DNA of 62,722 nt, the filler included, from Guillardia theta CCMP2712 (lineage: Eukaryota; Protista; Cryptophyta): NCBI RefSeq assembly GCF_000315625.1. It is 3 parts of 3 records of this genome, joined end to end, with 100 filler letters (N's around TTAATTAATTAA, not from the genome) between each part and the next. Parts side by side here need not be neighbours in the genome. Positions count along the whole stretch, not along the records: positions 47,004 to 62,722 come from NW_005434321.1; 2 more parts are not named here. One strand, given 5' to 3'. The notes beneath the pieces were generated by a model. That model ran no database searches. It was given only the letters and a program-made list of their open reading frames with translations, and was not told the origin of the DNA. Below, one piece after another: positions 47,004-62,722 of the stretch (the stretch's first letter is position 1; each line of letters starts with the position of its first letter). Both the position numbers and the translations under genes were made by a program.

Positions 47004-47477
47004 AGCCGCCTCCTCCATCACGATCCCTCGAATCTCTTCCCATCTCTCCTCCTCTCCCTCTCTCTCCATCCTCTCCCTCTCCCTCTCCCTCTCCCTCTCC
47101 CTCTCCCTCTCCCTTCTTGTCCCTTTCTGCTTCTCGACTCTCTCCCCTACTGTCCCCTCTTGAACGACGCGTGGCCAGCCCTTGATCCCCACCTCCTTGC
47201 ACGCTCGCTTCAGCGCCGTCAGCGAGATCCCCTGCCCCTCACGCGTCAGCTCCTCCTCTCCTCCTCCTCCTTCTCATGCCCGACAACGTGAGGAACGAAG
47301 GCTTACCAGCAGCCTGGTGGCGTCGACCTGGCGGAAGCAGAAGCGAGCGGCGATGTCCTCATAGGAGAGAGAGACCGGGGGCTTCTTGTGCTGGGAGCGC
47401 ATCTGAGAACTGTTGCGACGGGGAAGGACGACGGCTCGAGGTTTACGATCGCTGGGAGGCTTATGTTCGCTGCTCAT
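47004..47477 (-). CDS. RWP-RK transcription factor 1 (3' end in gap)
   Basis: MSSEHK..VLPRR..KKPPVSLSYEDIAARFCFRQVDATRLL|GISLTALKRACKEVGIKGWPR. Confidence 0.88.
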
Positions 47478-48019
47478 GGTCGTCGGATAGATCGAAGGAA
47501 GGGGAGGACAGGGAGCTTGGGAGGAGACGAGCAAGGTGAGAGGTGAGCTGTTCTGAGCAACTCCCTGGTACTAAGGGGCGGGAGGTTTGGGGGGGAGGGG
47601 GAGAGGAGGGGGGAGGGAAGGGAGCGACGTAGTGAAAGATGGGAGCAAAACGTGGCCTTTGCACCTTATCGTTGAGAGGAAACCATGGAGGATCGGAAGC
47701 AGCGGAAGGAGGAAGAAGGAACGAGAGGAGAAGAAGGTGCAGCGGCAGCGGCAGCGGCAGCGGCAGCGGCAGCGGCAGGAGGCGGAGGAGGCGGAGGAGG
47801 CGGAGGAGGCGGAGGGGAAGGAAACCAGCGCCTGCCAATTTTTTTCATCATCGCAGCCTTGCTGGTGTAAATGTGAGTTTGTGACTACCCGAGAGCGAGC
47901 TCGCCTCGGGATATATATACCAATGTGATCAAGGCATTAAATACTGAATAGATCTCTCTGCTGTTGCAGCATTTCTGCCCCGCATACTAAAAGTTGTGGT
48001 GGTGACAAAAATGATGATG

Positions 48020-48028
48020 ATGAGCAGG

Positions 48029-48100
<72 letters not shown>

Positions 48101-48293
48101 AGAAGGAGGAACTGGAGCAGGAGCAGGAGAAGGAGCAGCAGGAGCACGAGCAGGAGAAGGAGCAGCAGGAGCAAGGGCAGGAGCAGGAGCAGGAGCAGCA
48201 GGAGGCAGGAGCAGGAGCAGGAGCAGCAGGAGCAGCAGGAGAAGCAGGAGCAGGAGCAGGAGAAGCAGGAGCAGGAGCAGGAGAAGGATGAGA

Positions 48294-48352
<59 letters not shown>

Positions 48353-48389
48353 AGGAGCAGCAGCAGGAGCAGGAGGAGAAGGAGGAACT

Positions 48390-48423
<34 letters not shown>

Positions 48424-48424
48424 A

Positions 48425-48458
<34 letters not shown>

Positions 48459-48496
48459 AAGGAGCAGGAGCAGGAGCAGGAGGAGAAGGAGGAACT

Positions 48497-48569
<73 letters not shown>

Positions 48570-48575
48570 CAGGAC
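48020..48575 (+). repeat. (GCAGGA)n microsatellite array, followed by GAT/GAC/GGA tracts to ~49150
   Basis: Seen directly. Confidence 0.95.
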
Positions 48576-48773
48576 GAATAAGGAGGAACAAGTTCAGGAG
48601 AACGACCAGGGAAGGAGTGCTGATGATGCTTATAAGAACGAAAGGGAGAGGCGAAAAGAGGCGGGACGATGATCATGATGATTGAGAAACGACAACATGG
48701 CGGAGTGATAATGATTATGAGGATGATGGAAATGACGACAATGAGTTGGATGATGACGACGACGACGACGTCA

Positions 48774-48804
<31 letters not shown>

Positions 48805-49842
48805 TGATGAAGACGACGAAGAAGACGACGACGAAGGTGGTGGTGGTTGTACCATGATCAGGATCGTCGTGGTCGTCATTATATCTCCATCATAATCTCA
48901 ACCATGATGATGATGATGATGATGATGAAGAGGAGGAGGAGGAGGAGGAGGAGGAGGAGGAGGAGGAGGAAGATATCATTGACGATGACGACGACGACGA
49001 CGATGATGACGACGACGATGATAATGATCTTAATGGTGTTAAGGAGGAGGAGGATAGTTGTGGTGGCGATGATGATGACGAGGAGGAGGACAAGAAGGTG
49101 GAGAAGGTGGAGGAGGAAGTTGAGGTGGAAATGTGGCAGTAGTGGAGCAGGAGGTAGAGGATAATAAGAACATAATTGAAGAGACAGCAGTGTAGAAGAT
49201 AAATTTCAATGAGAACAAGAAAGAACAAGAATGCCGATGATTGTAGAACGACGACTGGGAATTCTTGCAGATTGATATTTTACCAATTCTGCAATGCCGT
49301 TGACGTGCTTCGTCTGAAACAACATTGCAGATGAGTTGATGATAGTGACGATAAAGAAGATGCTGAGGGCTGAGGGCATGAGAGGCCAGAATTACCAGCA
49401 CCAGCACCAGCACCAGCCGTGACCAGCTCCAGCTCCAGCTCCAGCTCCAGCTCCAGCTCCAGCTCCAGCTCCAGCTCCAGCTACAGGAGAGGCAGGGGCC
49501 GCAGCATTGATATCGAAGCCTAGAGAAAAGAGACGGGAAGACGGACAGGTAGAGAGGCGAGGCGGTGACAGGAGCGAGCTGAAACATCTGATTCATGAAG
49601 GTGAAGTCGAAGTGTGAAATGAAAGCTGCAACAGAAGACTTGAAGGCTATTTGTTATGATTGAAAACCATGAAGTGAAGAAGGATCTTGAGCAAACAGGT
49701 GGTGAGTGGTACATGCAGCGTACAAGGCCAGCATATGAGATACAAAAGAAGGAAGAGCGAGAGTGAGATGGAAGGAAACGGCAAGGAGGAGAGGAGCAGA
49801 GCAAGAGACAGGGACTTGGGCAGGGGGAGCAACAGATTCCGG

Positions 49843-49898
<56 letters not shown>

Positions 49899-50023
49899 TA
49901 GACCACATCAGACGACTCAGGGGATGTTTCAGTCGCGTCAGCTAAAACATCTTGTCGTTGGGATAGCTCAGATCATAAGGTTTTATTCTTCGATTTAAAC
50001 TTGTACTTGATACAATCCAGATA

Positions 50024-50456
50024 TCAAAACTCAACCCTCCCTCCGCACTTTCCTCGCCCTCTCGCCATCTCCTGCTCTACATGCTGCAGGGCCTCAGCAA
50101 AAAGCTCACTCCTCCATCCTACTGCTGCCTCCTGCGTCTTGTTCCTGTCCTCGTCCGCTGTCTCCTTCCTCTCGCTCCCTGGCGACCTCAAGTATGGCCA
50201 TCTCTCGACCCCGATGCTCCTACAAGCACGCTTCAGCGCCGTCAGTGAGATTCCCTGCCAGACATTCCTTTAGAGCCATCCTTCCCTCCGCCTCCTCTGT
50301 GAAACTAACCAACTGTCGAGCAGCATCGGTCTGGCGGCGGTAAAAGAGAGGAGTGACGGAAGCGAGGGTCAAGACCACTCGTGGCTTCTTGTTGAGGGAG
50401 GAGAGCTGCGTTCGAGATCGTCGAGGAGAGACAAATGCCTTGGTAGCTGCTACCAT
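50024..50456 (-). CDS. RWP-RK transcription factor 2
   Basis: MVAATKAFVSPRR..KKPRVVLTLASVTPLFYRRQTDAARQL|GISLTALKRACRSIGVERWPYLR..ELFAEALQHVE..RVEF*. Confidence 0.9.
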
Positions 50457-51339
50457 GTTGCTGCCTGCAGTATCATATCTTCACGGCGGGCCTTGTCTCA
50501 CAGAGGCAGGGGCATAAGGAAGGAGAAGAAAGTTCCGACCCCGAGGCCATGAAAGGAAGCGTGTTCATGTGATACTTTGTGGTAGGTTGAAAACAAGCTT
50601 CCTCCCGCCTCCTCCTCCGCCCCCCGTTGCGACCCTGCGGCTGACCGTACCAGAAGATTTGGAAATGGTCTTAACTACTGGAGAGGAGTCGCATCGGGGT
50701 GCCGGTCATGACACGTCAGCAAGCGTCTCCTAGGGAAGAACTCGTCTCTTTTCGCTGGTCTCTGGTGGCTGGGTGGCTGGGTGTCGACAATCAGGAGCCT
50801 CCGAGTGCCGTAGTACAGTACTGCACTCGTGGCGTGACTGGCTTTTGAGTAAACACTGGCCTACTCAGATGGCCGGCCCCCGGCCCCACCCCGGGGGCCC
50901 GCCGCGGCTCACTGAGTCAGCCGCCGGCCGGGCCCCGCCCCGGCCCCACACCGCACCCGGTGACCGTTGAAAAGTTGCCGAGTCACACGGTACGGTAAAG
51001 TTTTACCGTGCTCAAAGCCTTTAACGGTCAGAACTTGAAAATCAGTACGAGGACAACTTGGCAATCACTGGCAGGCCCGAGCCTACCGTAGTACCGTACT
51101 CGGAGTAGATGAGGCTTGCCGCCGTCCTGATGATGAACCCTCATTCCGGGGCCGCGGCGGCCCCGGGCAAACTTAACTTAACTGATAAACTGATAAACTT
51201 ACTGAACTAAGGTAAAAACTTGGGCAACACAAGCCTCCTCGCCGGAACATATGAGACTCAGCGGACGCATACCGCGTGCCAGGACGGCCACCTGCGATGA
51301 TGGCCCGGCCGGTGATCAGCCGGGCCCGCCGCGGGCGGC

Positions 51340-52130
51340 ACTGCGGCAGACCGTGACGGTGAGGCTGAGACGGCCCGAGTCTTGCGGCAAACGCATCCGG
51401 TCCAGGATCTTTCATCAGCTCAACGTCTTGCGAGGCCGAGAGACCATCCAGCGCTGCCGTTTCCTTGTTCGCCGAGCGATCCGCCAGCCTCCACAGAAAG
51501 CGCAACGCATCATCCTGCAAGAGTCCATCAGTGCTGGCGATGATGGGAAAGAAGGCCTTGCCCTCGGATCTTCCTCTGTGCCACTGTCACCATCTCGTTC
51601 AGCCCCCGTGACAGGTTGACCGAGCGCTGAGCCGCGAGCGGCCGGCCGCGGGCATAACTGGCCCTCAGCCTAGTAGGCCCGCCGCCTACGGCGCACGGTG
51701 GCGTGTATGCCGCTGACAAGTTTCTTCATGGATTGCCGGTTGACCTCCCGCCGCACTGCGATAAATGCCATCATCTTCTCCGTCATCCTGGGGGGACCAC
51801 ACACATGGCAACCTGCAGGCACCGCAGCCCGTTATGGACTGATGCGCATGAGAAGTGCAATGCCGTCCTCAGTACCCTCATCAAAGATTCAGGAGTGAGA
51901 TGCCGTGTCCACGTGCAAGGCGTACCCGGCACCAGGCAGAACGTTTCCCAACATGGCCCTGAAGATCATCATGTAGGGGACTTTGAACTTCCGCAATTGC
52001 AGGCCACTGGTGGCTGATGGCATGGGTTCATCCTGGACTTCAGCATGTCACATGTTTTTACTGCAAGCAGCAGCAGGTTAGGGCAGGTACTAGCGCTGAG
52101 CACTGGCCACATTGTCCCACCAGGGCCAAT
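51340..52130 (+). mobile_element. Decayed non-LTR retrotransposon 3' fragment (CRE/R2-like CCHC + restriction-like endonuclease)
   Basis: CDKC..HMATC..AHEKCNAVLSTLIKDSG..GDFEL, then frameshifted FILDFSMSH, matching the RLE layout (CCHC, H/N, GD, D-x-S-x-x-H). Upstream frames are broken. Confidence 0.55.
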
Positions 52131-52572
52131 CACTGTTTCTCACAGATCTTCCAAGTTTATCACTTGCTCCGACTCGGCCAATGGGCCAACCGGGTTCAAG
52201 TTTGAGTCTCACTGAACCACGGAACATTCAGAGAGCATCGCTCACCGCTGTATCGCATTAGGAAGCCTGAGAGAATAGTAGTTGATACGGGACTGCAAGC
52301 TGTTCTCACTTGTTGTATGAGAGCCTTAGTTTGAAAACTCAGTCGACAGTATCAACATGTTAACTCGGATTAAGTTCGTATCTTTAAATTACAATAATAA
52401 CTATATGAAAGGACAAGAGCACTGCCATTATTTCATCTCTTGAAAGAAGGATTTGATCAGATATGTTCATCTTGATCACATCTTGTCTCAGACGATCTTG
52501 GCTACCTCCCTCTCAAGTAGTCCCTCTCAAAAACAATTACACTGTATCTTGTTGCCTGTGTTGCGATCTCTC

Positions 52573-53203
52573 TCATCGATCCCGTCGTTCAAGGCGACGC
52601 ATGGGACAACACTCAACTTGCAGTGCACGGACCACTTTCCCTTGGACATGCTGTAGCGCCTCTTCAAAGACTTCATCGAGTACGCTCCCTCCACTCCTAC
52701 TCCCTCCCCATCTCCACTCGTCTTGGTTCTTGCGCAAGCATCGAGAGTCTTCTGCCTCACTGCCCTCCTCCATCCATCTGCTCTCCTCATCTCCCTCCTC
52801 AGGCGCTTCCTGCGACGCAACGCCCTGAGTGGGTGTCCCAGGGCTTTTCTGTGATCTTGAGTATGGCCACTTCCCTGCCCCGACCTTCTTGCAAGCTCTC
52901 TTCAACGCTGTCAGCGAGATCCCCTGCATGCCCTCGTCAGTTCCTCTGCCCCTCCCCACCACCACCACCACCGCCACCAACTTCTCCCCCCAACTCCTCT
53001 GATCCTCATCTCAAGCTTTTGTGCTGATGCAGGCAGGCGGCTCTTCTTACCAGGCGATGGGCAGCCTCGGACTGACGGAGGTGGAAGAGGGCGGTGATGG
53101 ATTGAAGGGAGAGGAAGATCTTTGGCTTCTTATGCATGAGGGAGAGCTGGTCGTGGGAGCGACGGGGCACGACGAGAGCGACTCTGTCAGGAGCAACAAC
53201 CAT
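52573..53203 (-). CDS. RWP-RK transcription factor 3
   Basis: MVVAPDRVALVVPRR..KKPKIFLSLQSITALFHLRQSEAAHRL|GISLTALKRACKKVGAGKWPYSR..DEVFEEALQHVQ. Confidence 0.92.
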
Positions 53204-54102
53204 GTCCCTAGTGAAACAGTGGCGGCTCCTCGGTGATCAGTGAAAAGGATGGTTTTATCGTGTGGTTACACACCTGATTGCTGACTAAAAGTATATTGAT
53301 GTCCTGGTGACCGGTACCTGGTTTGTGCAAGAGTCCAAGAAGTCGCTTTCGGGGGGCAAGTCTACGGAGAAGAGGGGGTAGGAAAAGTTACCCTGGAAGA
53401 GCATATCCCCTGGTGATAAACCTCAGAGATAATAATAGTCTCAGGGGTCATTTGACTGTCACGTTACCGTCGCTCCTAACCCCGACGGATGCAAGAAGGC
53501 GAAAGAATAGTCTCTGAATTGTTGACTGAAAATTAAGACCACGGTGCTTTCGTAACGGCAGTTTAACGACTCAAGGGAAGTTGACTGATTCAGAAGATAT
53601 TAAAACTGTGCTGACCGTTCACTTACCGCCCCCTAAAAGGCTCCACGTGACCTGCACGCTGCGCCCACATGACCAGGACCCACCCCTTGGGCTGAGCTAC
53701 TATCCCTCGTACCCCCCGTCATAGTGACTATATCCGTATCCCTGCAGGGATAGCTTTGCTCTTTAGCATACCTTAGGCCCTGGTACACCTTCCTAGGACC
53801 TCAATGAACTACAGTGAATCAGCTATCGTGCCGGATCTGGTTCTGAAAACATGTATTTTGAAGAAAAGCTCTTTTCAGCTGACAGGATGATGACCCCGAG
53901 TGAAGACTGGTTAAACCCAGGGGGGAGACGGGTACACAGCAGGGTACACAGGTAGAGGAGAGTACTGATAGGGGAGCTCGTGGAGGAGGCAGAAGCATCG
54001 TCGACACGAAATCTAAAGGAGAGGGGACCAGGGAGGAGGACAAGTGAAATCGTACTCAGGAAGAGTGATAGTTGACACAGAGCCGGCAAGATACTAGCGG
54101 GG

Positions 54103-54547
54103 ATGCTCGAGCCGAAAATTGCGCGAATCGTTCCGAGGCGAAAGCATCAGCAGCTCGGCCTCGTAGCCAAGAAGAGCGAGATCGCCGTGACGTCTGACAG
54201 GATCCGTTCTCTGCTCCATCTCAAACAGGCGGATGCGGCGCACGAGCTGGTGAGATGGCCAGCCCTTGTTTTTCAGCAGAGCAGCTGACTGTGCCCAGGG
54301 GATATCCCTGACGGCGCTCAAGGGAGCGTGCCGTTTGCTGGGTGTAGGGAAGTGGCCGTACTCGAGGACGAGATACCCGCAAGAGACAAGAGGAAGAGAG
54401 GCAGCGAAGAGCGACGAAAATGAATCCTTGGGGGAAAGTGAAGAGGGTGATGTGGAATGGGGGGAGGTCAAGGGGGAGGGAGAAGAGGGGGGTGGAGGGT
54501 TTGGGGAATTGTTCATGGAGGCTTTACGGCATGTCGAGAATCGTTGA
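54103..54547 (+). CDS. RWP-RK transcription factor 4
   Basis: MLEPKIARIVPRRK..KKSEIAVTSDRIRSLLHLKQADAAHEL|GISLTALKGACRLLGVGKWPYSR..ELFMEALRHVENR*. Confidence 0.92.
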
Positions 54548-54769
54548 GAGTTTATGAGTTTGTAAGTGGAGTTGCTATAGGAAGAATGATTGATGTTATT
54601 TAGAAAAGAGATTGATAACGCACACCGAAATCCTGGAGTATACTGGAGAAGATGGTGTGTTGTTTTCTTGAGGTTTTGTACCAAAATAAATTTGAAAAGA
54701 CACTATCGCTACGTTCACAACGCCTTGATCTCATACGATTCTTTATCGGAAACAGAACTCTCGTAGCAC

Positions 54770-55830
54770 TCACAACTTGGCCTGATATAGAACTTTTCTG
54801 CACCTCAGCATCATTCCAGACAATTGAGATGACAAGGCAAAAATGATCACCTGTTGAGCACATACTGAATGATATTGTCAACAGCCATACAGGCCATCTT
54901 CTCGCGCGTAGGAACAGAGGCGCTACCTTTGATTGCTGTTGGAACCGAGACAAGACTCTATCATGCTTACCAATATGCGGGAACACAACGCAGTTGGGTA
55001 GGAAGAGCAAAGGATGGTCGACAGGCAGAGGCTCTGGCATAGTAACATCGAGGCCAGCCCTGTGACCGGCACACGTCAAGGGCTGGGAGAAGGAAAGGAT
55101 CACAGATTTCCTACCCCGCTATAGTCCCATCCTTCAGTGCCTCGACCAGATCGTCCTACCAATTTGTTCAGGAGGGTGGTGGGCGGGGACAAGGCTGGTA
55201 TGGACGAGTGAGTCTACCTGAACAACCGCCTCTCCTCGAGTAGCGTTGATGAAAATCGCTGTCTGTCAGCCTGACTGAGTTGGTCCTCCGACTTGTCACC
55301 TCCTGCACCTCCTTCATCTGTCGGAACTTGTCGCGTCCGAAGTACCCTCGTGTCCTACGAATCTCGTCATGGTCCTTGTAAACCCTTGCACGCTCATGGA
55401 CTTGTCGTTCAAGGGGAACATGGGGACGACATAGTCGCTGGTCCTGTAGAGATCAGAAGGTGAGGAGGGCGGAGCAAGTCGACAGCGAGCATGCAGCACT
55501 GACCGCAGCAGCTCCTCCTCCGACACATATCTGTGCAAGCACATAATCCATCCAGGGTTTTCAAACACGATCGTGCTACCTGCAGCCAAGTTTGTCTGCT
55601 TCCTCCTTCTTGTTCGGCCCCGAGTACAGCACGTCACATCCAAACGCCTGTAGGGTCTTGAGATAAGAAGGTCGCAAGTGCACTTGTCAAACTTTCAGTC
55701 GGCGTGCAACGGCTTGTCCAATCCTGCCACATCCGACGATTCCAACGGTCGAGCTTTCTCGCAAGTCACCGGGGAACTTTCTCGTTGCGCAGAGAAGACG
55801 AATAGAAAGAAAGCAAGGTAGGTAGGCAGG

Positions 55831-55861
<31 letters not shown>

Positions 55862-56843
55862 GCAGGCAGCCAGGAAGGCAGGCAGGCAGGAAGGAAGGCA
55901 GGCAGGCAGGAAGGCAGGAAGGCAGGCAGGCGGGCGACTGGAGTCAAGAGAAGGCGAAAGGAGGCAAGGCAAGACAAGGGAAGCAACATTGGTGAGCATT
56001 TGATCGTGAGAACCTGTGTACATCTTTCCCGCACATCCAGAGGGGGTCCCATGTCCCCCACGTTCCATTCCTGACCGCCTGCAGAGCCTGCAATGTCTTG
56101 AGGGAGGAGAAGGAAGAGGATGGAGATGATGACAGTCGTACTTGCTCAATCTTCCTTGCTGTCACCAGCATCAGAGCCACCTGAATTGCAAAGTGAGAAC
56201 AGCTGGTCATGAGACATGAGGGATTTGTGGATGACAGTGAGGATTGTACACATATGTAAAGAGCTCTTTGTCTATACATGTCATGAAACCAAACATCAAC
56301 CATCAATCATCAACACACAACAAATCCACATTGCACACGATGAAAGCAAGGTGTCGATAGGATCATGTCAAGGAAGGCATAACAACAGCAGGATGATCGG
56401 AAGTCAGTCTGTTTACGGTCGTATCCGCAGTAGTCTCAGTCAGGCAGTCAGGTGTATAACCGAGCAGGATGTTTGCTCGAGAGAGAGCCTGAATGGATGG
56501 AATGAGCAGCTCGCTCAGCAACAAGTTATGTCCTGACTGACCTGTACATCGATATGATTGTACCCGACACTCATGGTTGAGACAATCTTCAGGTTTGGCC
56601 CGGCGGCCTGGATAATTTCCTGATTCACCTGATGAATATCAGTTTGACCACCATTGCTGACGTTCTCGCCTCTATCCTCTCCACCGTTTCCCCACAAGCA
56701 TCTCATCATCAACATCGTCTTTGTAGCTGTTGTCATTGATGTTGCTTTTGAAATCATGATAACAATCGGGAGAGAATTATCGTCGTTGTCATCGTCCGCG
56801 TCACAGCCTTCACCGCCTTCATCATCATCATCATCATCACCGC

Positions 56844-56938
<95 letters not shown>

Positions 56939-57296
56939 CCACCACCACCACCACCACCACCACCACCACCATTAGTAACAGCAGCATATTTTCCACCTCT
57001 CACCTTGTCCGTCAGCATCACCAGCATACCATCAACGCCACGTGCTCTTGCTCGAAACTCTTCTGGCGGAATAGCTACATCTGCCTTGTCAAACAGGTCG
57101 TAGACGATCCCTGGTGTCTCGGACAGTTTCTTGAGCGCGACTTCAGGAATCCTGGAAGGCAAGTTGAGTGGAAGAGGATGAAGAGGAAGGTGAGTCAAAG
57201 GAGGTAGAAGAAGTGAAGATGGGCAAGCAACTGTAAGAAGACAAGCAGAAGTAAATTTGGAATGAAGAGAACGAGGACTAGGACGAGTAAAAGAAA

Positions 57297-57351
<55 letters not shown>

Positions 57352-57467
57352 CTCGACGTCGCACCTCCTTGTCACGAGGAGCTTGAAAGGAGCAGTAGCT
57401 AATCGGGGCAGGTAATTCAGCCTAAACCTGTTCAGCTCAACATTCTCATCCTACCTCCAGTCGACAT
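54770..57467 (-). CDS. GRHPR: Glyoxylate/hydroxypyruvate reductase (D-2-hydroxyacid dehydrogenase), many exons
   Basis: [90 protein letters not shown]|SAS. The start may extend upstream. Confidence 0.92.
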
Positions 57468-57829
57468 GAACGTCTTCTGCAACCCTGACATCCCGTCAGT
57501 CCTCCGACTCGTCTCCAGCTGACTCCCAGCTCTCACCCGCACAATCGATGATGACTCTTCCTGCAACGATGCCTTGGCCTGCCCTCCTGCAACCAAGGGG
57601 GTAAGAGCCGTTCAGCTTCCTTCTCCTCCCTCGCCTCCTCCCTCGCCCCAGTCAGATCTTCGTCCGCGATTGAGCTAGATGTCTCCCCTTCATCGGTCTC
57701 AGTAGGTGTCTTCCTCCTTCCTGCTATTTCCTCCCTTCGTCCTCCCTTCGTCCTCCCTTGCTCCTCGACACCATCCTCATGATCCCGCTCCTGATTCTTC
57801 TCCTCATCTCATCTCCTCCTCCTCCTCCT

Positions 57830-58370
<541 letters not shown>

Positions 58371-59440
58371 ATCAATCTCCTGCTCCTGATCCTCCTCTCC
58401 TCCTCCTCCTCCTCCTCCTCCTCCCATCATCCACTTACAGGGCTCTGAGCATAGAGAAATCCTTCGAATGGCGGGCCAACCCCTTTAGTTCTAGAATCGA
58501 CTAGTCAGTCTGCTACTAGTCAGTGGGCAGCTGCTCCGATCATTTCCCCGGGCCCCGGCCCTGGCCAGTGCACGTGCAATGGTCGAAGCACGAGGATCGT
58601 ATCATGGCGGAGCGCGACAGTTGCGGAGAGGAGGAGGAGGAGGAGGAGGAGTGTAGTAGAGGAAGCAGAGGGGCGGCAAGATGTCTTCGGATCTCAAAAA
58701 TGCATGCGAGGATAGGAAGGACTCTATGGCTCCTCCCCCAGCAGCAGCATGCGATGCAAAGGCATCTTTGCTTCTTTCTGGGTAAACATGCAAGTGCGAG
58801 CAGCTGAGAGGGAGCTCTCAACCTAAAGGAGACTGGATCTCTAGCTAATGGCAAGCGCCGAGGAATTTTGTTGCAGGTAAGGAGTGTTGAATGGCCTGTT
58901 GTTGTTCCATGCTTCCTATGTAGCGGCAGCGGTCAAATGATGCACTTTACGTCAGTACCGACTGAATCCTCTCAGTCTCAGACTGAAGATTCTGAAGTCA
59001 GCTTTGTAAATGATGACTCGCTCTCTCTCCCTCCTCCGTCCCTTTGGACCCTCTGCTTCACGCTGATACCTCGGACAGGTGGCGCGTGAGGGGTCGATTG
59101 CTAACAGCGTGCCATGCCCAATGAATCTTGTAGAAGCATGTAAACACTTTGAGTATGGACGATAGATGTTGCAGTTCAATCATACAAATTTTTATGAGAT
59201 GTGATCAATGTTTGAGCTCGAATGAAAGTCGACAAATAAACACATTCAAAGTCATGCTAGGGTGACGTCAAAGCTTTACAGTATGAACGCACTTTAACAG
59301 TGTTGAACCATAGTTTATGTACATCAAACAACGCTTTTATCGGAAGACATCTCTGTCTTCTCACCTTACCCGTTGTGAACATGCTCAGTGCATACAAATC
59401 GTGACTTCAGCTCTAGCGATATCGGCACCCGCGTGCCTGT

Positions 59441-62062
59441 TCAGAAGCTCCTCCCTTTACTTGTTGTAGCTGCGAAGCTTTGCCAGCCGACTCTGAAGCT
59501 GGGAGATTCGGTCTGAAAGAGCCACCTCCCACTCCTTACAAGTCCCGTAGATCGAAGGGGGCTGAGTAGCATCCATCTTCTTGTGCTCCGGGACGCTGCT
59601 GTTAACGCTGCCGCTAACGCTGCTGTTGCTGTTTCTTTCTGCGCTGACGGCACCTGCATTGCACTGTTCTTGACTTCCATGTCCTTGGAGCTCGGCCGCT
59701 TCACCGAGACTGTATGCTGCTCGCTCTGCCTTACCAGGTTGGACTGGACCGTCTCCGTGATAGAGTGCCTATGGGGAACCTGCGACAGGGTTCAGCAAGT
59801 GTTTTCTCACAGCGACATGCTATCAGTACATGATGACGCAGCACGTGTTGACTTCTGTTAACCTCGGGGCCTCGAGGCGACTCAACCTTGCAGGCTGTCT
59901 CACGGACCCGTTCGATGATCGACTTGCTCCTGTCCTTGCACTGGGCTGCTGATGCTGGGGGAGCCTTGCTCGAGACCACCACCGAACTTGCTTCCCGACT
60001 TGTCTCCACCTTGCTCGGATGACTTGACTTGCTACTTCGCTCATCCTCCTCAGCTGTCCCAGAGAACTCCGAGGCATCCGCGATGGTATTCGAGCTTCCG
60101 GCAGACTCCGACGCAGCCTTCGTGCTGCAGAGGCTTAAGGGCGTCTGCGAGGAGACCTGCCCAGGAGAGTACATCTCGTTGGATTCATTGCTGCCTTGCG
60201 ATAGCTCGATCCGCAGCCGGGTGACCCCGGGCTCGTGCTTGCTGCTCTCGCCGTCGGCAGCTTCCTCGTAGCAACCGACGCCAAGGGGGATGTTCGGGAT
60301 CTCCGAGTAGTCATCAAAGGTATTGATCTCCTCGTCATCCATGTAGCTCTTGGAGGCGATTTCCAGGCAGCCAGTATCGTCAGTCCTCTTGGAGTCGAAG
60401 TTGCTAGGAAGACGCAGCGTCAAGGGATGAGGGGCACAGCAAAGGCGCAGCCTTACCTGTCAAAGAAGAAGGGGTGCTTCTTCGCATCCGTGGCGTTGAT
60501 ACGTAGGTTGGGGTCGAAGGCGAGCATGTCCTCAAGAAGCGAGAGGAGCTGCGCGTCGTAGATCATGTCTGACAAGACCTTCTTGACCCTTGACCCCGCA
60601 GACAAACTCCTGACCGGTCGGGTACAGTCGGATCTCAGCCTGTACTTGGCAGATGCCTTTCCTTGCCGAATCAAGTCAGGAGGAAACGAGTTCTCCGTCA
60701 CGAAGGAGATGACGCTGAGATATTCGGCTTCGTTGCATGCAGGAAAGAGGAAGTCTCCGATACAAAGCTCCGCCAGCACACAACCGATCGCGTACATGTC
60801 CACAGGATACGACCAAGCTGAAGCAGTAGAGGTTAAAACAAGCAGATGGCAGCACAACATGAGCGGCTACCTGCTTGTAGAATGATCTCTGGCGCTCTGT
60901 ACTCCAACGTTCCGATGACTGGTGGGTGCCAGTCATTGACAAAGATAGCGGAGCCCAAGTCAACGACTTTGATTGTAACTGCACCATCAGGGCCTGTCGT
61001 GCAAGTTACCAACAGCAGTCCATGAAGCAGGTATGATAAGCACCATGCGCGAGTAAAATGTTCTCAGCTTTTATATCAGTGTGGATAACGCCCTTGTTGT
61101 GCATGTAACAAGTAGCATGCACTATCTGCAGACCAATATCCTTGATCTGCACAACTAGATCAAAGAGAGATCAGAAAACGCTTGGCTCTAAAACACCTCC
61201 TGGATCTTGAAAGGTTTCTTGTTCCGTCTCATGTAATGCTGAATGTTGTCTCCATACATTTCCAATGACATGCATATGTGCCCGTCGTGAACGAAGTCTC
61301 GCAGAAGCTTCACCAGGCCATGAGTTCCACCTGAGAGTGTGGTAAGGTGGACCGGATCAAACTACCGCCTTCCAATCACCGAGGTAACGGAGCACTTTGA
61401 TCTCCTTCTTTGCTGCTTCTTTGTAGATCGGAGGATCTCTCCGTACAATCTTGACCGCAACTGGCAAATTGTATTTCTTGTCCGTACATTCCAAAACCTT
61501 GAGGGTCATGTCACCAGCGGCATGAAAGCATTCAGCTATCAACCTTTCCATAGGTTCCCGCACCCAGTTTTCGCTTGATGATATACCTCCCGCTAGGGAA
61601 ATCTTTGGAGCGATTGATAGAATCTCCAACGTACCCCACAAAGTGACCGGAATCTTGCTATGGGATACAATCATCAACCCGGACGTAACAGGTGGGGTTC
61701 TGTCACAGTTACCGTGGGGGTGGGGACTATTTTCACCGGAGGCACCGGATTTGCAACTCGTGTGCGGATTCTGTCGTCCATCACCTCCTGTTCAACCCGC
61801 TGTCAACCGACGAGGATAAGAGTTGTTCAACAATGTATCACAATGTTCTTTGGAGATGCGACAGTGGAGTAGTCTTTCGCCTGAGATGGAGTTAGTCACC
61901 GCAAATAATCGTCGTTGAAGATCACATTTTGAGTCTGCCCTCCATTCGCCGTCTTGTACGCCGTTGATGGCGATAGTGGGAAGTAGGCTCCTCCTGTAAA
62001 ACGTCTCAGGTCAGGGTAATCAAAAGGTCTCATCGCACAAAACCTGCTTGGTAGCCGTACAT
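59441..62062 (-). CDS. CMGC protein kinase, CLK/LAMMER-like, with a long S/E-rich C-terminal tail
   Basis: RYIIKRKLGAGTYGK|VLECTD..VAVKIVR..EAAKKEI, IHTDIKAENILL, VVDLGSA..GTLEYRAPEIIL, WSYPVDMYAIGCVLAE, DMLAFDPNLRI..HPFF. Confidence 0.88.
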
Positions 62063-62722
62063 ATTATAATGTCGAAGCTATCTGTTCGGGAGAAACGTCA
62101 GTCATTCCACACCATCACAAAATCAGAAGAAAATCATTTCATGATGAAGTGAAATTTTCATAATATATTGAATGCACAAAAACTGATCTCCTATCTCTCA
62201 AAACTGGTGGCCATGCTCAAAACAATGAGCTCGGTTCTACGCATTTGCAGATAGACAACACGAAGCGACTTTTCCCATCTAAATCACTCCACATCTGTTA
62301 TCAACAAGGCTCATTTTTTTCGCACCCTTCTTGTGCTTTTCTTCTATACCTTACTCACTGTGACCGTAAGAAATCAAAAATCCTACGCAGCAATCCACTA
62401 GATCAACCTTGGAGGAAACACGCTCGGACTTGATTTTACACCAACTTGTCGCCTTCATATTCTGGTCTACATATTCTCACTGCCCAGCATTCTACTCATC
62501 CTCTCCGCATGCTCCGCACTCGCCAGCCATCCTCTCGTGAACTTCAAGTGAGGTTCATCATCGCCCAAGGTCATCCGACTCTCGTTACCTGGAAGGGTCC
62601 CTCCGAAAAGCACTAAAGGTTAATATTCAATTATTGTTTCATTGAAATTTGAATAACATCGATCAAATTTGGATTGATTTTGATACTTCAGGACCTCTTA
62701 ATTAACCGAAGGGTGAAAGTAC

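What the first reader, a model, noticed from the sequence alone, without database searches (positions are those of the whole stretch)
47004..54547. Cluster of four short, diverged RWP-RK genes with a shared intron and novel flanking motifs
Seen in sequence: four mini-genes (~125-180 aa; gene 1 is cut by a gap) within ~7.5 kb. Each has a phase-0 intron at exactly L|GISLTALK, an N-terminal PRR-x(9-10)-KK motif and a variant core (GWPR, RWPYLR, KWPYSR) lacking the final RK. After an acidic linker there is a C-terminal amphipathic motif (ELFAEALQHV, EVFEEALQHV, ELFMEALRHV; gene 1 reads IVMEEAA at the gap). Linkers and introns have diverged, so the copies look old and retained. Established: RWP-RK-only proteins include volvocine MID (mating type) and plant RKD (gamete fate); NIN/NIT2 control nitrogen response. 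Inference: a lineage-specific TF subfamily, possibly for sex, life-cycle or nitrogen control, whose EALxHV helix may bind cofactors.
Basis: partly seen in the sequence, partly recalled or inferred. Interest (0 to 1): 0.8.

Follow-up and report, generated by a model that had tools for sequence, protein, structure and literature searches.

The report
Old cluster of cryptophyte RWP-RK mini-genes
Four small, anciently duplicated genes for RWP-RK-type DNA-binding proteins sit together on a short Guillardia theta scaffold, but they belong to a large cryptophyte expansion in which such arrays recur, so the locus is real without being special.

Summary
The piece is Guillardia theta CCMP2712 scaffold JH993317.1. 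It carries four two-exon mini-genes: g1 (at least 133 aa, cut by the scaffold end), g2 (125 aa), g3 (167 aa) and g4 (131 aa). Each has a GT..AG phase-0 intron just before GISLTALK, a PRR-x9-KK motif, a WPYxR-type core (GWPRVV in g1) and, in g2-g4, a C-terminal E[LV]FxEALxHV.

g4 is the annotated GUITHDRAFT_122531 and passes Pfam RWP-RK (46.2 bits, cut-off 29.3). Spliced contigs in two studies confirm its intron. g1-g3 are unannotated.

Selection is purifying: dN/dS is 0.05 in the g4 domain and 0.31 for g2, each against an environmental ortholog about 10% diverged.

The flanking motifs mark a subfamily, not this locus. About 35 of the top 150 exhaustive-search hits carry the C-terminal motif, and every one I could name is from Guillardia or Hanusia. 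At least 24 annotated G. theta paralogs exist, and arrays of 2-4 copies occur at three other loci I fetched.

Most likely these are minimal helix-turn-helix transcription factors with an acidic linker and a short C-terminal cofactor- or activation-type helix. A role in sex or nitrogen control is untested.

The parts
47004..47477 (-). g1. Unannotated RWP-RK mini-gene: exon 1 47307-47477, intron 47232-47306, exon 2 47004-47231, cut by the scaffold end. PRR..KK lies at 47382-47423 and the core at 47160-47231 (GWPRVV). It is the most diverged copy.
   Evidence: Exon 2 gives Pfam RWP-RK 24.8 bits. The family HMM gives 92.4 bits. It departs from the family at two nearly invariant positions (AA to AT, WPY to WPR). 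dN/dS against the other copies is 0.45-0.88.
50024..50456 (-). g2. Unannotated RWP-RK mini-gene, 125 aa: exon 1 50310-50456, intron 50255-50309, exon 2 50024-50254. The core lies at 50183-50254 (RWPYLR) and ELFAEALQHV at 50078-50107.
   Evidence: Exon 2 alone gives Pfam 31.7 bits, above the 29.3 cut-off. The environmental ortholog L003 is 89% identical in nucleotides, keeps an intact ORF and GT..AG, and gives dN/dS 0.31. About two raw RNA reads were laid here.
52573..53203 (-). g3. Unannotated RWP-RK mini-gene, 167 aa: exon 1 53051-53203, intron 52924-53050, exon 2 52573-52923. The core lies at 52852-52923 (KWPYSR) and EVFEEALQHV at 52645-52674.
   Evidence: Exon 2 gives Pfam 25.2 bits. The family HMM gives 129.7 bits over the full length. 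It groups with g2 and GUITHDRAFT_152911/152912 (92/90). No ortholog was found. About two raw reads were laid in its 3' region.
53947..54547 (+). g4 = GUITHDRAFT_122531, 131 aa. The 5' UTR starts at or before 53947. Exon 1 is 54103-54249, the intron 54250-54298 and exon 2 54299-54547. The core lies at 54299-54370 (KWPYSR) and ELFMEALRHV at 54506-54535.
   Evidence: P0002 is identical to the spliced model. Pfam RWP-RK gives 46.2 bits. Spliced contigs occur in X6 and X7 and a 5' contig in X8. The orthologs are Hanusia phi P0006 and environmental L002. dN/dS is 0.05 in the N-terminal part plus domain.
53204..54102 (.). The 900-bp region between the divergently oriented g3 and g4 start codons, presumably holding both promoters.
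   Evidence: The g4 transcript contigs begin at 53947-53966. No promoter test was made.

Best explanation
The four genes are old paralogs of a large family of minimal RWP-RK transcription factors. So far the family is seen only in the cryptophytes Guillardia and Hanusia and in close environmental relatives.

Each protein has four parts: a short N-terminal strand ending in PRR; a three-helix helix-turn-helix RWP-RK domain whose signature reads WPYxR instead of RWPxRK; a fast-evolving acidic disordered linker; and a conserved C-terminal amphipathic helix of the form hydrophobic-hydrophobic-x-E-A-L-x-H-V.

Shown: the genes are real. g4 is transcribed and spliced. g4 and g2 are under purifying selection concentrated on the domain and the C-terminal motif. 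The cluster is ancient, not a recent tandem burst.

Inferred: the domain binds DNA. The acidic linker plus terminal helix act as a short activation or cofactor-docking module. The many paralogs give different target or partner specificities.

g1 may be decaying. g2 and g3 are probably functional but silent or very low in ordinary cultures.
For: Identity: the piece equals GCA_000315625.1 JH993317.1.

Domain: Pfam PF02042 gives 46.2 bits for g4, and exon 2 alone hits in all four.

Expression: spliced g4 contigs occur in two studies, with the joint at 54249|54299 GT..AG.

Selection:
- g4 against L002: dN/dS 0.34 overall, 0.05 in the N-terminal part plus domain, 0.97 in the linker, and 1 change in the 12 C-terminal codons.
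- g2 against L003: dN/dS 0.31, with ORF and splice sites intact and indels only in intron and UTR.
- Paralog pairs among g2-g4: 0.30-0.40 with dS above 1.

Family:
- 1980 hits at E<=1e-3 and 281 at E<=1e-10.
- About 35 of the top 150 carry the C-terminal motif.
- All 20 such proteins I looked up are from G. theta or Hanusia phi. P0098 is also G. theta.

Age: g4 is sister to Hanusia P0006 (100/99), while g2 and g3 sit elsewhere in the tree.

Structure: AlphaFold2 gives mean pLDDT 75.5, helices at 31-36, 42-49 and 53-63, low-confidence residues 75-115, and a C-terminal helix 117-129 with pLDDT about 87. The nearest folds are all helix-turn-helix DNA binders, at weak scores.
Against: No DNA binding, activation or partner has been tested for any member.

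Structural matches are weak (Z at most 4.2; Foldseek E above 0.7).

g2 and g3 are absent from the annotation, from the G. theta transcript-derived proteins in the database, and from three RNA-type assemblies. Only about two raw reads each were laid.

g1 has lost two nearly invariant residues and is truncated by the scaffold end.

The dN/dS values rest on 21-35 substitutions each.

The taxon range is a lower bound: unnamed hits could not all be looked up, so presence in other cryptophytes is not excluded.
Confidence: 0.8

Rival explanations
1. The cluster is, or lies in, a mating-type or life-cycle locus. One or more of these MID-like proteins would act as a sex or stage determinant.
For: The proteins are small and carry only an RWP-RK domain, like MID. 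The scaffold is short, rich in repeats and unplaced, as hemizygous regions often are. g2 and g3 appear silent in ordinary cultures. Elsewhere in the genome two family members flank a TALE homeobox gene.
Against: There are at least 24 paralogs, with arrays at several loci. The architecture is the reverse of MID, which has an N-terminal interaction domain followed by RWP-RK. g4 is expressed in ordinary culture samples. There are no data on strain presence or absence or on coverage.
Confidence: 0.07
2. Only g4 is a living gene. g1-g3 are unexpressed relics of old duplications.
For: g1-g3 are not annotated and were not found among transcript-derived proteins or RNA-type contigs. The g1 core is degenerate and its dN/dS against the other copies is 0.45-0.88.
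Against: All ORFs, start codons and GT..AG sites are intact despite dS above 1 between copies. The g2 ortholog in a relative about 10% diverged keeps its ORF and intron, with dN/dS 0.31 and very high linker and C-terminal conservation. The terminal motifs are kept in g2 and g3.
Confidence: 0.15
3. They are nitrogen-response regulators in the manner of NLP, NIN or NIT2.
For: They share the RWP-RK DNA-binding domain.
Against: No GAF-like or PB1 domain is present; the proteins are 125-167 aa with only PF02042. No expression data under nitrogen stress were available.
Confidence: 0.08
4. The C-terminal helix is not an activation motif. It would be a dimerisation element, or an autoinhibitory element that packs on the helix-turn-helix domain.
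For: The helix has a high pLDDT of about 87 in a monomer model, which is unusual for a free helix. RWP-RK factors MID and VSR1 act as dimers through regions outside the domain.
Against: The model's coordinates and contacts could not be inspected. An acidic linker followed by a short hydrophobic and acidic helix is the classic pattern of activation motifs; this rests on established knowledge, not on a test here.
Confidence: 0.3

Closest known systems
Volvocine MID (minus dominance), a small RWP-RK protein
   Same: Small size and a single RWP-RK domain, with no GAF or PB1 domain. Geng et al. 2014 already call the cryptophyte proteins 'small Mid-like'.
   Different: MID has an N-terminal partner-binding domain and a C-terminal RWP-RK domain. 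Here the RWP-RK domain is N-terminal and a conserved helix is C-terminal. MID is one sex-linked gene, whereas here there are at least 24 paralogs. The signature reads WPYxR, not RWPxRK.
Plant RKD proteins (RWP-RK domain-containing, gametophyte and egg-cell regulators)
   Same: RWP-RK without PB1; presumed DNA-binding transcription factors.
   Different: The Guillardia/Hanusia N-terminal PRR strand and the C-terminal xEALxHV helix were found only in cryptophyte proteins among those I could name. The one plant protein looked up (P0065, Vaccinium) matches the profile only from about position 26, so it lacks the N-terminal extension. No joint phylogeny was made.
NLP / NIN / NIT2
   Same: The RWP-RK domain (PF02042).
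   Different: Those proteins are long and carry GAF-like and PB1 domains, which are absent here.
Other Guillardia theta RWP-RK mini-gene arrays (GUITHDRAFT_152911/152912; 117244/117245 with neighbours; 155398/118089)
   Same: The same family and motifs, in arrays of 2-4 genes within a few kb. 152911 and 152912 have a 69-nt gap in their gene models; its position before GISLTALK is inferred from the relative P0008, whose read-through insertion lies there.
   Different: Those arrays are recent duplicates at 89-99% nucleotide identity, and some are intronless. The copies in this cluster share only 38-59% amino-acid identity in the conserved block, and g4 predates the Guillardia/Hanusia split.

Membership tests
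RWP-RK domain family (Pfam PF02042) | Score at or above the Pfam gathering cut-off of 29.3 bits | tested here: met
   Full-length g4 gives 46.2 bits over profile positions 2-46 of 49. g2 exon 2 alone gives 31.7 bits. g1, g3 and g4 exon 2 alone give 24.5-25.2 bits for only the second half of the domain. Spliced g1-g3 have no reference, so they were not scanned whole. Against my own family HMM they score 92-130 bits.
RWP-RK domain family (Pfam PF02042) | Literal RWPxRK hexapeptide | tested here: not met
   The cores read KWPYSR (g3, g4), RWPYLR (g2) and GWPRVV (g1). W and P are invariant and Y nearly so across 67 family members. The basic residue sits one position later. This is a subfamily variant, also common among the top 150 hits.
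MID (volvocine mating-type determinant) | Conserved N-terminal MID domain upstream of a C-terminal RWP-RK domain | tested here: not met
   The RWP-RK domain occupies residues 29-73 of 131 and is followed by a linker and helix. The MID architecture is taken from PMC4086717 and PMC10629530.
MID (volvocine mating-type determinant) | Presence in one mating type only (sex-linked, hemizygous) | not testable with these tools
   Reads were laid on RNA runs. No multi-strain DNA comparison was available.
NLP / NIN-like proteins | GAF-like N-terminal domain and C-terminal PB1 domain | tested here: not met
   Only PF02042 is found in g4 and its relatives, and the proteins are 125-167 aa.
Guillardia/Hanusia mini-RWP-RK subfamily (defined here) | N-terminal xPRR strand, GISLTxLKxAC...WPYxR core, variable acidic linker, and a C-terminal helix of the form hydrophobic-hydrophobic-x-E-A-L-x-H-V | tested here: met
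   g2, g3 and g4 have all four features. g1 has the first two in degenerate form, and its C-terminus is cut off.

The most novel reading that the evidence does not exclude
The Guillardia/Hanusia mini-RWP-RK family is a combinatorial switch for the poorly known cryptophyte sexual or haploid-diploid life cycle. This old four-gene cluster, with three members silent in culture and sitting on an unplaced repeat-rich scaffold, would mark a hemizygous mating-type-like region.
Probability: 0.06. Interest if true: 0.7.

Novelty: new variant of a known kind. Interest (0 to 1): 0.3.

Why it matters
Cryptophytes have no known sex- or stage-determining genes. RWP-RK factors fill that role in green algae and plants.

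A defined, expanded subfamily gives concrete candidates and a simple domain map for experiments: a helix-turn-helix domain plus a conserved terminal helix. The census also shows that the G. theta annotation misses members: three here and one more in L005.

The cluster itself is ordinary within this genome. Its value is as an entry point to the family rather than as a special locus.

Tried and rejected
- Rfam found nothing in the piece.
- Pfam found nothing in the ORFs of the repeat at 51.2-52.0 kb.
- Two metagenome scans for g3 or family relatives found nothing, so conservation of the cluster in a relative could not be tested. L002 shows synteny only from g4 into the dehydrogenase gene.
- Foldseek against PDB gave no significant match, and VIA-align gave Z of at most 4.2.
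- The Curtis 2012 genome paper is not held.
- Spliced g1-g3 proteins were not sent to Pfam, structure prediction or the database searches. They have no reference and I did not type them. I used exon-wise scans and an HMM built in the sandbox instead.
- I considered that the cluster arose as a recent tandem duplication and rejected it.
- I considered that the g4 spliced contigs could be DNA. That is unlikely: they remove exactly the GT..AG intron and otherwise match the locus with no mismatches. A processed genomic copy was not formally excluded.
Full report
**What is there.** The piece (window 47004-62722) is identical to Guillardia theta CCMP2712 scaffold JH993317.1, 15,719 bp, assembly GCA_000315625.1. 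Reading and six-frame translation give four two-exon genes:
- g1 (-): 47477-47307 and 47231-47004.
- g2 (-): 50456-50310 and 50254-50024.
- g3 (-): 53203-53051 and 52923-52573.
- g4 (+): 54103-54249 and 54299-54547.

The introns are 75, 55, 127 and 49 nt. All are GT..AG and phase 0, and all lie between L and GISLTALK.

The proteins share PRR-x9-KK and GISLTALKxAC...G..WP. g2, g3 and g4 also share E[LV]FxEALxHV near the C-terminus. g1 runs off the scaffold end at IVMEEAA. No fifth copy exists in the piece.

**Family membership.**
- Exon 2 alone matches Pfam RWP-RK positions 23-47 in all four genes. g2 scores 31.7 bits, above the 29.3 cut-off.
- g4 is the annotated GUITHDRAFT_122531 (P0002), identical to my spliced model. 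Full-length it scores 46.2 bits.
- g1-g3 are not among the three genes annotated on the scaffold. Those three are g4, a 2-hydroxyacid dehydrogenase and a protein kinase.
- Against an HMM built from 67 family proteins, g3, g2 and g1 score 129.7, 108.1 and 92.4 bits. Shuffled versions score at most 5.5.

**Expression.**
- In runs X6 and X7, from two studies, contigs of 429 and 456 nt cover 53947/53966 to 54443/54451. They skip exactly 54250-54298 (GT..AG) and show no mismatches.
- X8 has a 278-nt contig over the 5' UTR and exon 1.
- g4 is therefore transcribed and spliced as modelled.
- g2 and g3 have no contigs in these runs. In the raw-read run X17 only 12 reads were laid over the whole 4.6 kb, about two near each of g2 and g3. 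Their strand matches that seen for g4. This is inconclusive.

**Selection.**
- Metagenome contig L002 is 89.6% identical over 1.4 kb and continues into the downstream dehydrogenase gene, so it is a g4 ortholog from a close relative.
- For g4 against L002, dN/dS is 0.34 overall, 0.05 over the N-terminal part plus RWP-RK block (56 codons) and 0.97 in the linker. There is 1 change in the 12 C-terminal codons. Intron and 3' flank are 87-88% identical.
- L003 is a g2 ortholog at 89.3% identity. It has an intact ORF, conserved GT..AG, and indels only in the intron and UTR. dN/dS is 0.31.
- Among the paralogs, g2, g3 and g4 give 0.30-0.40 with dS of 1.1-1.3. Pairs involving g1 give 0.45-0.88.
- Nucleotide similarity between copies is confined to 35-80 nt encoding GISLTALK..WP.

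**The family.**
- An exhaustive profile search found 1980 proteins at E<=1e-3 and 281 at E<=1e-10.
- About 35 of the best 150 carry the C-terminal motif.
- All 20 motif-bearing representatives I looked up are from G. theta or Hanusia phi, or are metagenome contigs clustering with them. P0098 is also G. theta.
- Counting the names returned, at least 24 annotated G. theta genes belong to the family.
- The alignment shows a constant architecture: an xPRR strand, the RWP-RK domain, a variable acidic linker, and a terminal helix of the form hydrophobic-hydrophobic-x-E-A-L-x-H-V.
- Longer environmental proteins of 500-600 aa share the N-terminal extension but lack the terminal helix.

**Arrays elsewhere.**
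- L004 holds two mini-genes on the arms of a 531-nt, 98% inverted repeat that flanks a TALE homeobox gene.
- L005 holds four copies in 8.6 kb, one of them unannotated. Three are direct repeats at 89-99% identity.
- L006 holds two convergent, near-identical copies.
- Scaffold JH993085.1 carries five members.
- Some of these genes are intronless. 152911 and 152912 each have a 69-nt gap in the gene model. Its position before GISLTALK is inferred from the relative P0008, whose read-through insertion lies there.
- What distinguishes it is age. In the tree, g4 is sister to Hanusia P0006 (100/99), and g2 and g3 group with 152911/152912 (92/90). g1 is unresolved and the backbone is weak.

**Mechanism.**
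- AlphaFold2 on g4 with 67 homologs gives mean pLDDT 75.5. It predicts strands 6-9 and 27-30; helices 31-36, 42-49 and 53-63 (pLDDT 90-95); a low-confidence linker at 75-115; and a C-terminal helix at 117-129 (pLDDT about 87).
- The nearest shapes are an RWP-RK cluster in the ESM Atlas and bacterial helix-turn-helix DNA binders (NtrC/Fis-type, GcrA, LuxR/GerE, sigma region 4). All scores are weak.
- Inference: the proteins bind DNA through the helix-turn-helix domain.
- The acidic linker plus short amphipathic helix has the pattern of an activation or cofactor-docking motif. That reading rests on established knowledge of acidic activation motifs and was not tested. Dimerisation or autoinhibition are alternatives.
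- In volvocine algae, MID works by heterodimerising with the RWP-RK factor VSR1 through regions outside the domain (PMC10629530). This makes partner binding plausible here.

**Literature.** Only two held papers mention both RWP-RK and Guillardia. Geng et al. 2014 note small Mid-like proteins in cryptophytes, citing the G. theta genome paper. A Rhodomonas salina preprint counts 56 RWP-RK-like genes. I found no description of the terminal motifs.

**Verdict.** The feature is real and correctly described. It is a set of members, three of them unannotated, of a Guillardia/Hanusia variant of a known transcription-factor family. Biological role is unknown, and the mating-type or nitrogen readings are untested and a priori weak for this particular locus.

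Noticed in passing
window 51386-52155: A multi-copy element. Contigs of the RNA-type runs match at 95-99% with summed depths up to about 16,000, show strand-switch joints and run on into unlike sequence. Its ORFs have no Pfam hit and there is no Rfam hit. It is probably a highly transcribed repeat or transposon relic between g2 and g3.
   Followed up: partly
L004:6871-10531 (G. theta JH993003.1): A 531-nt inverted repeat, 98% complementary. Each arm carries an RWP-RK mini-gene (GUITHDRAFT_152911 and 152912), and the arms flank a TALE-class homeobox gene (PF05920). Both gene kinds control the sexual cycle in green algae.
   Followed up: partly
L005:5900-14600 (G. theta JH993071.1): Four RWP-RK mini-genes lie in 8.6 kb. 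The copy with its core at about 6045 (+) is not annotated. Three copies are direct repeats at 89-99% identity and are intronless.
   Followed up: partly
window 47540-49900 and 56800-58420: Dense microsatellite tracts of several units: GCAGGA, GAC/GAT, GGA, CAGCTC, CAGG, CAT, CAA, CTA. The annotated 2-hydroxyacid dehydrogenase gene (about 54847-58452, minus strand) spans such tracts and a 100-N gap, so its model may be unreliable.
   Followed up: no
P0006 (Hanusia phi) and P0008 (ENA contig): The Hanusia g4 ortholog has 7 extra residues (VEGRDCL) exactly at the intron position. P0008 is a prokaryote-style ORF call that reads in frame through a 69-nt intron, beginning with V and ending with Q, at the same position.
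   Followed up: no
G. theta scaffolds of 15.7, 9.4 and 6.6 kb: Three family members (GUITHDRAFT_122531, 122732 and 122818) sit on very small unplaced scaffolds. This suggests the family tends to lie in regions that are hard to assemble.
   Followed up: no
window 47232-47264 and 52924-52955: Similarity between g1 and g3 extends about 30 nt into the 3' end of the intron, covering a CTGAC branch-point-like motif and the acceptor site. Three of the four introns carry CTGAC.
   Followed up: no
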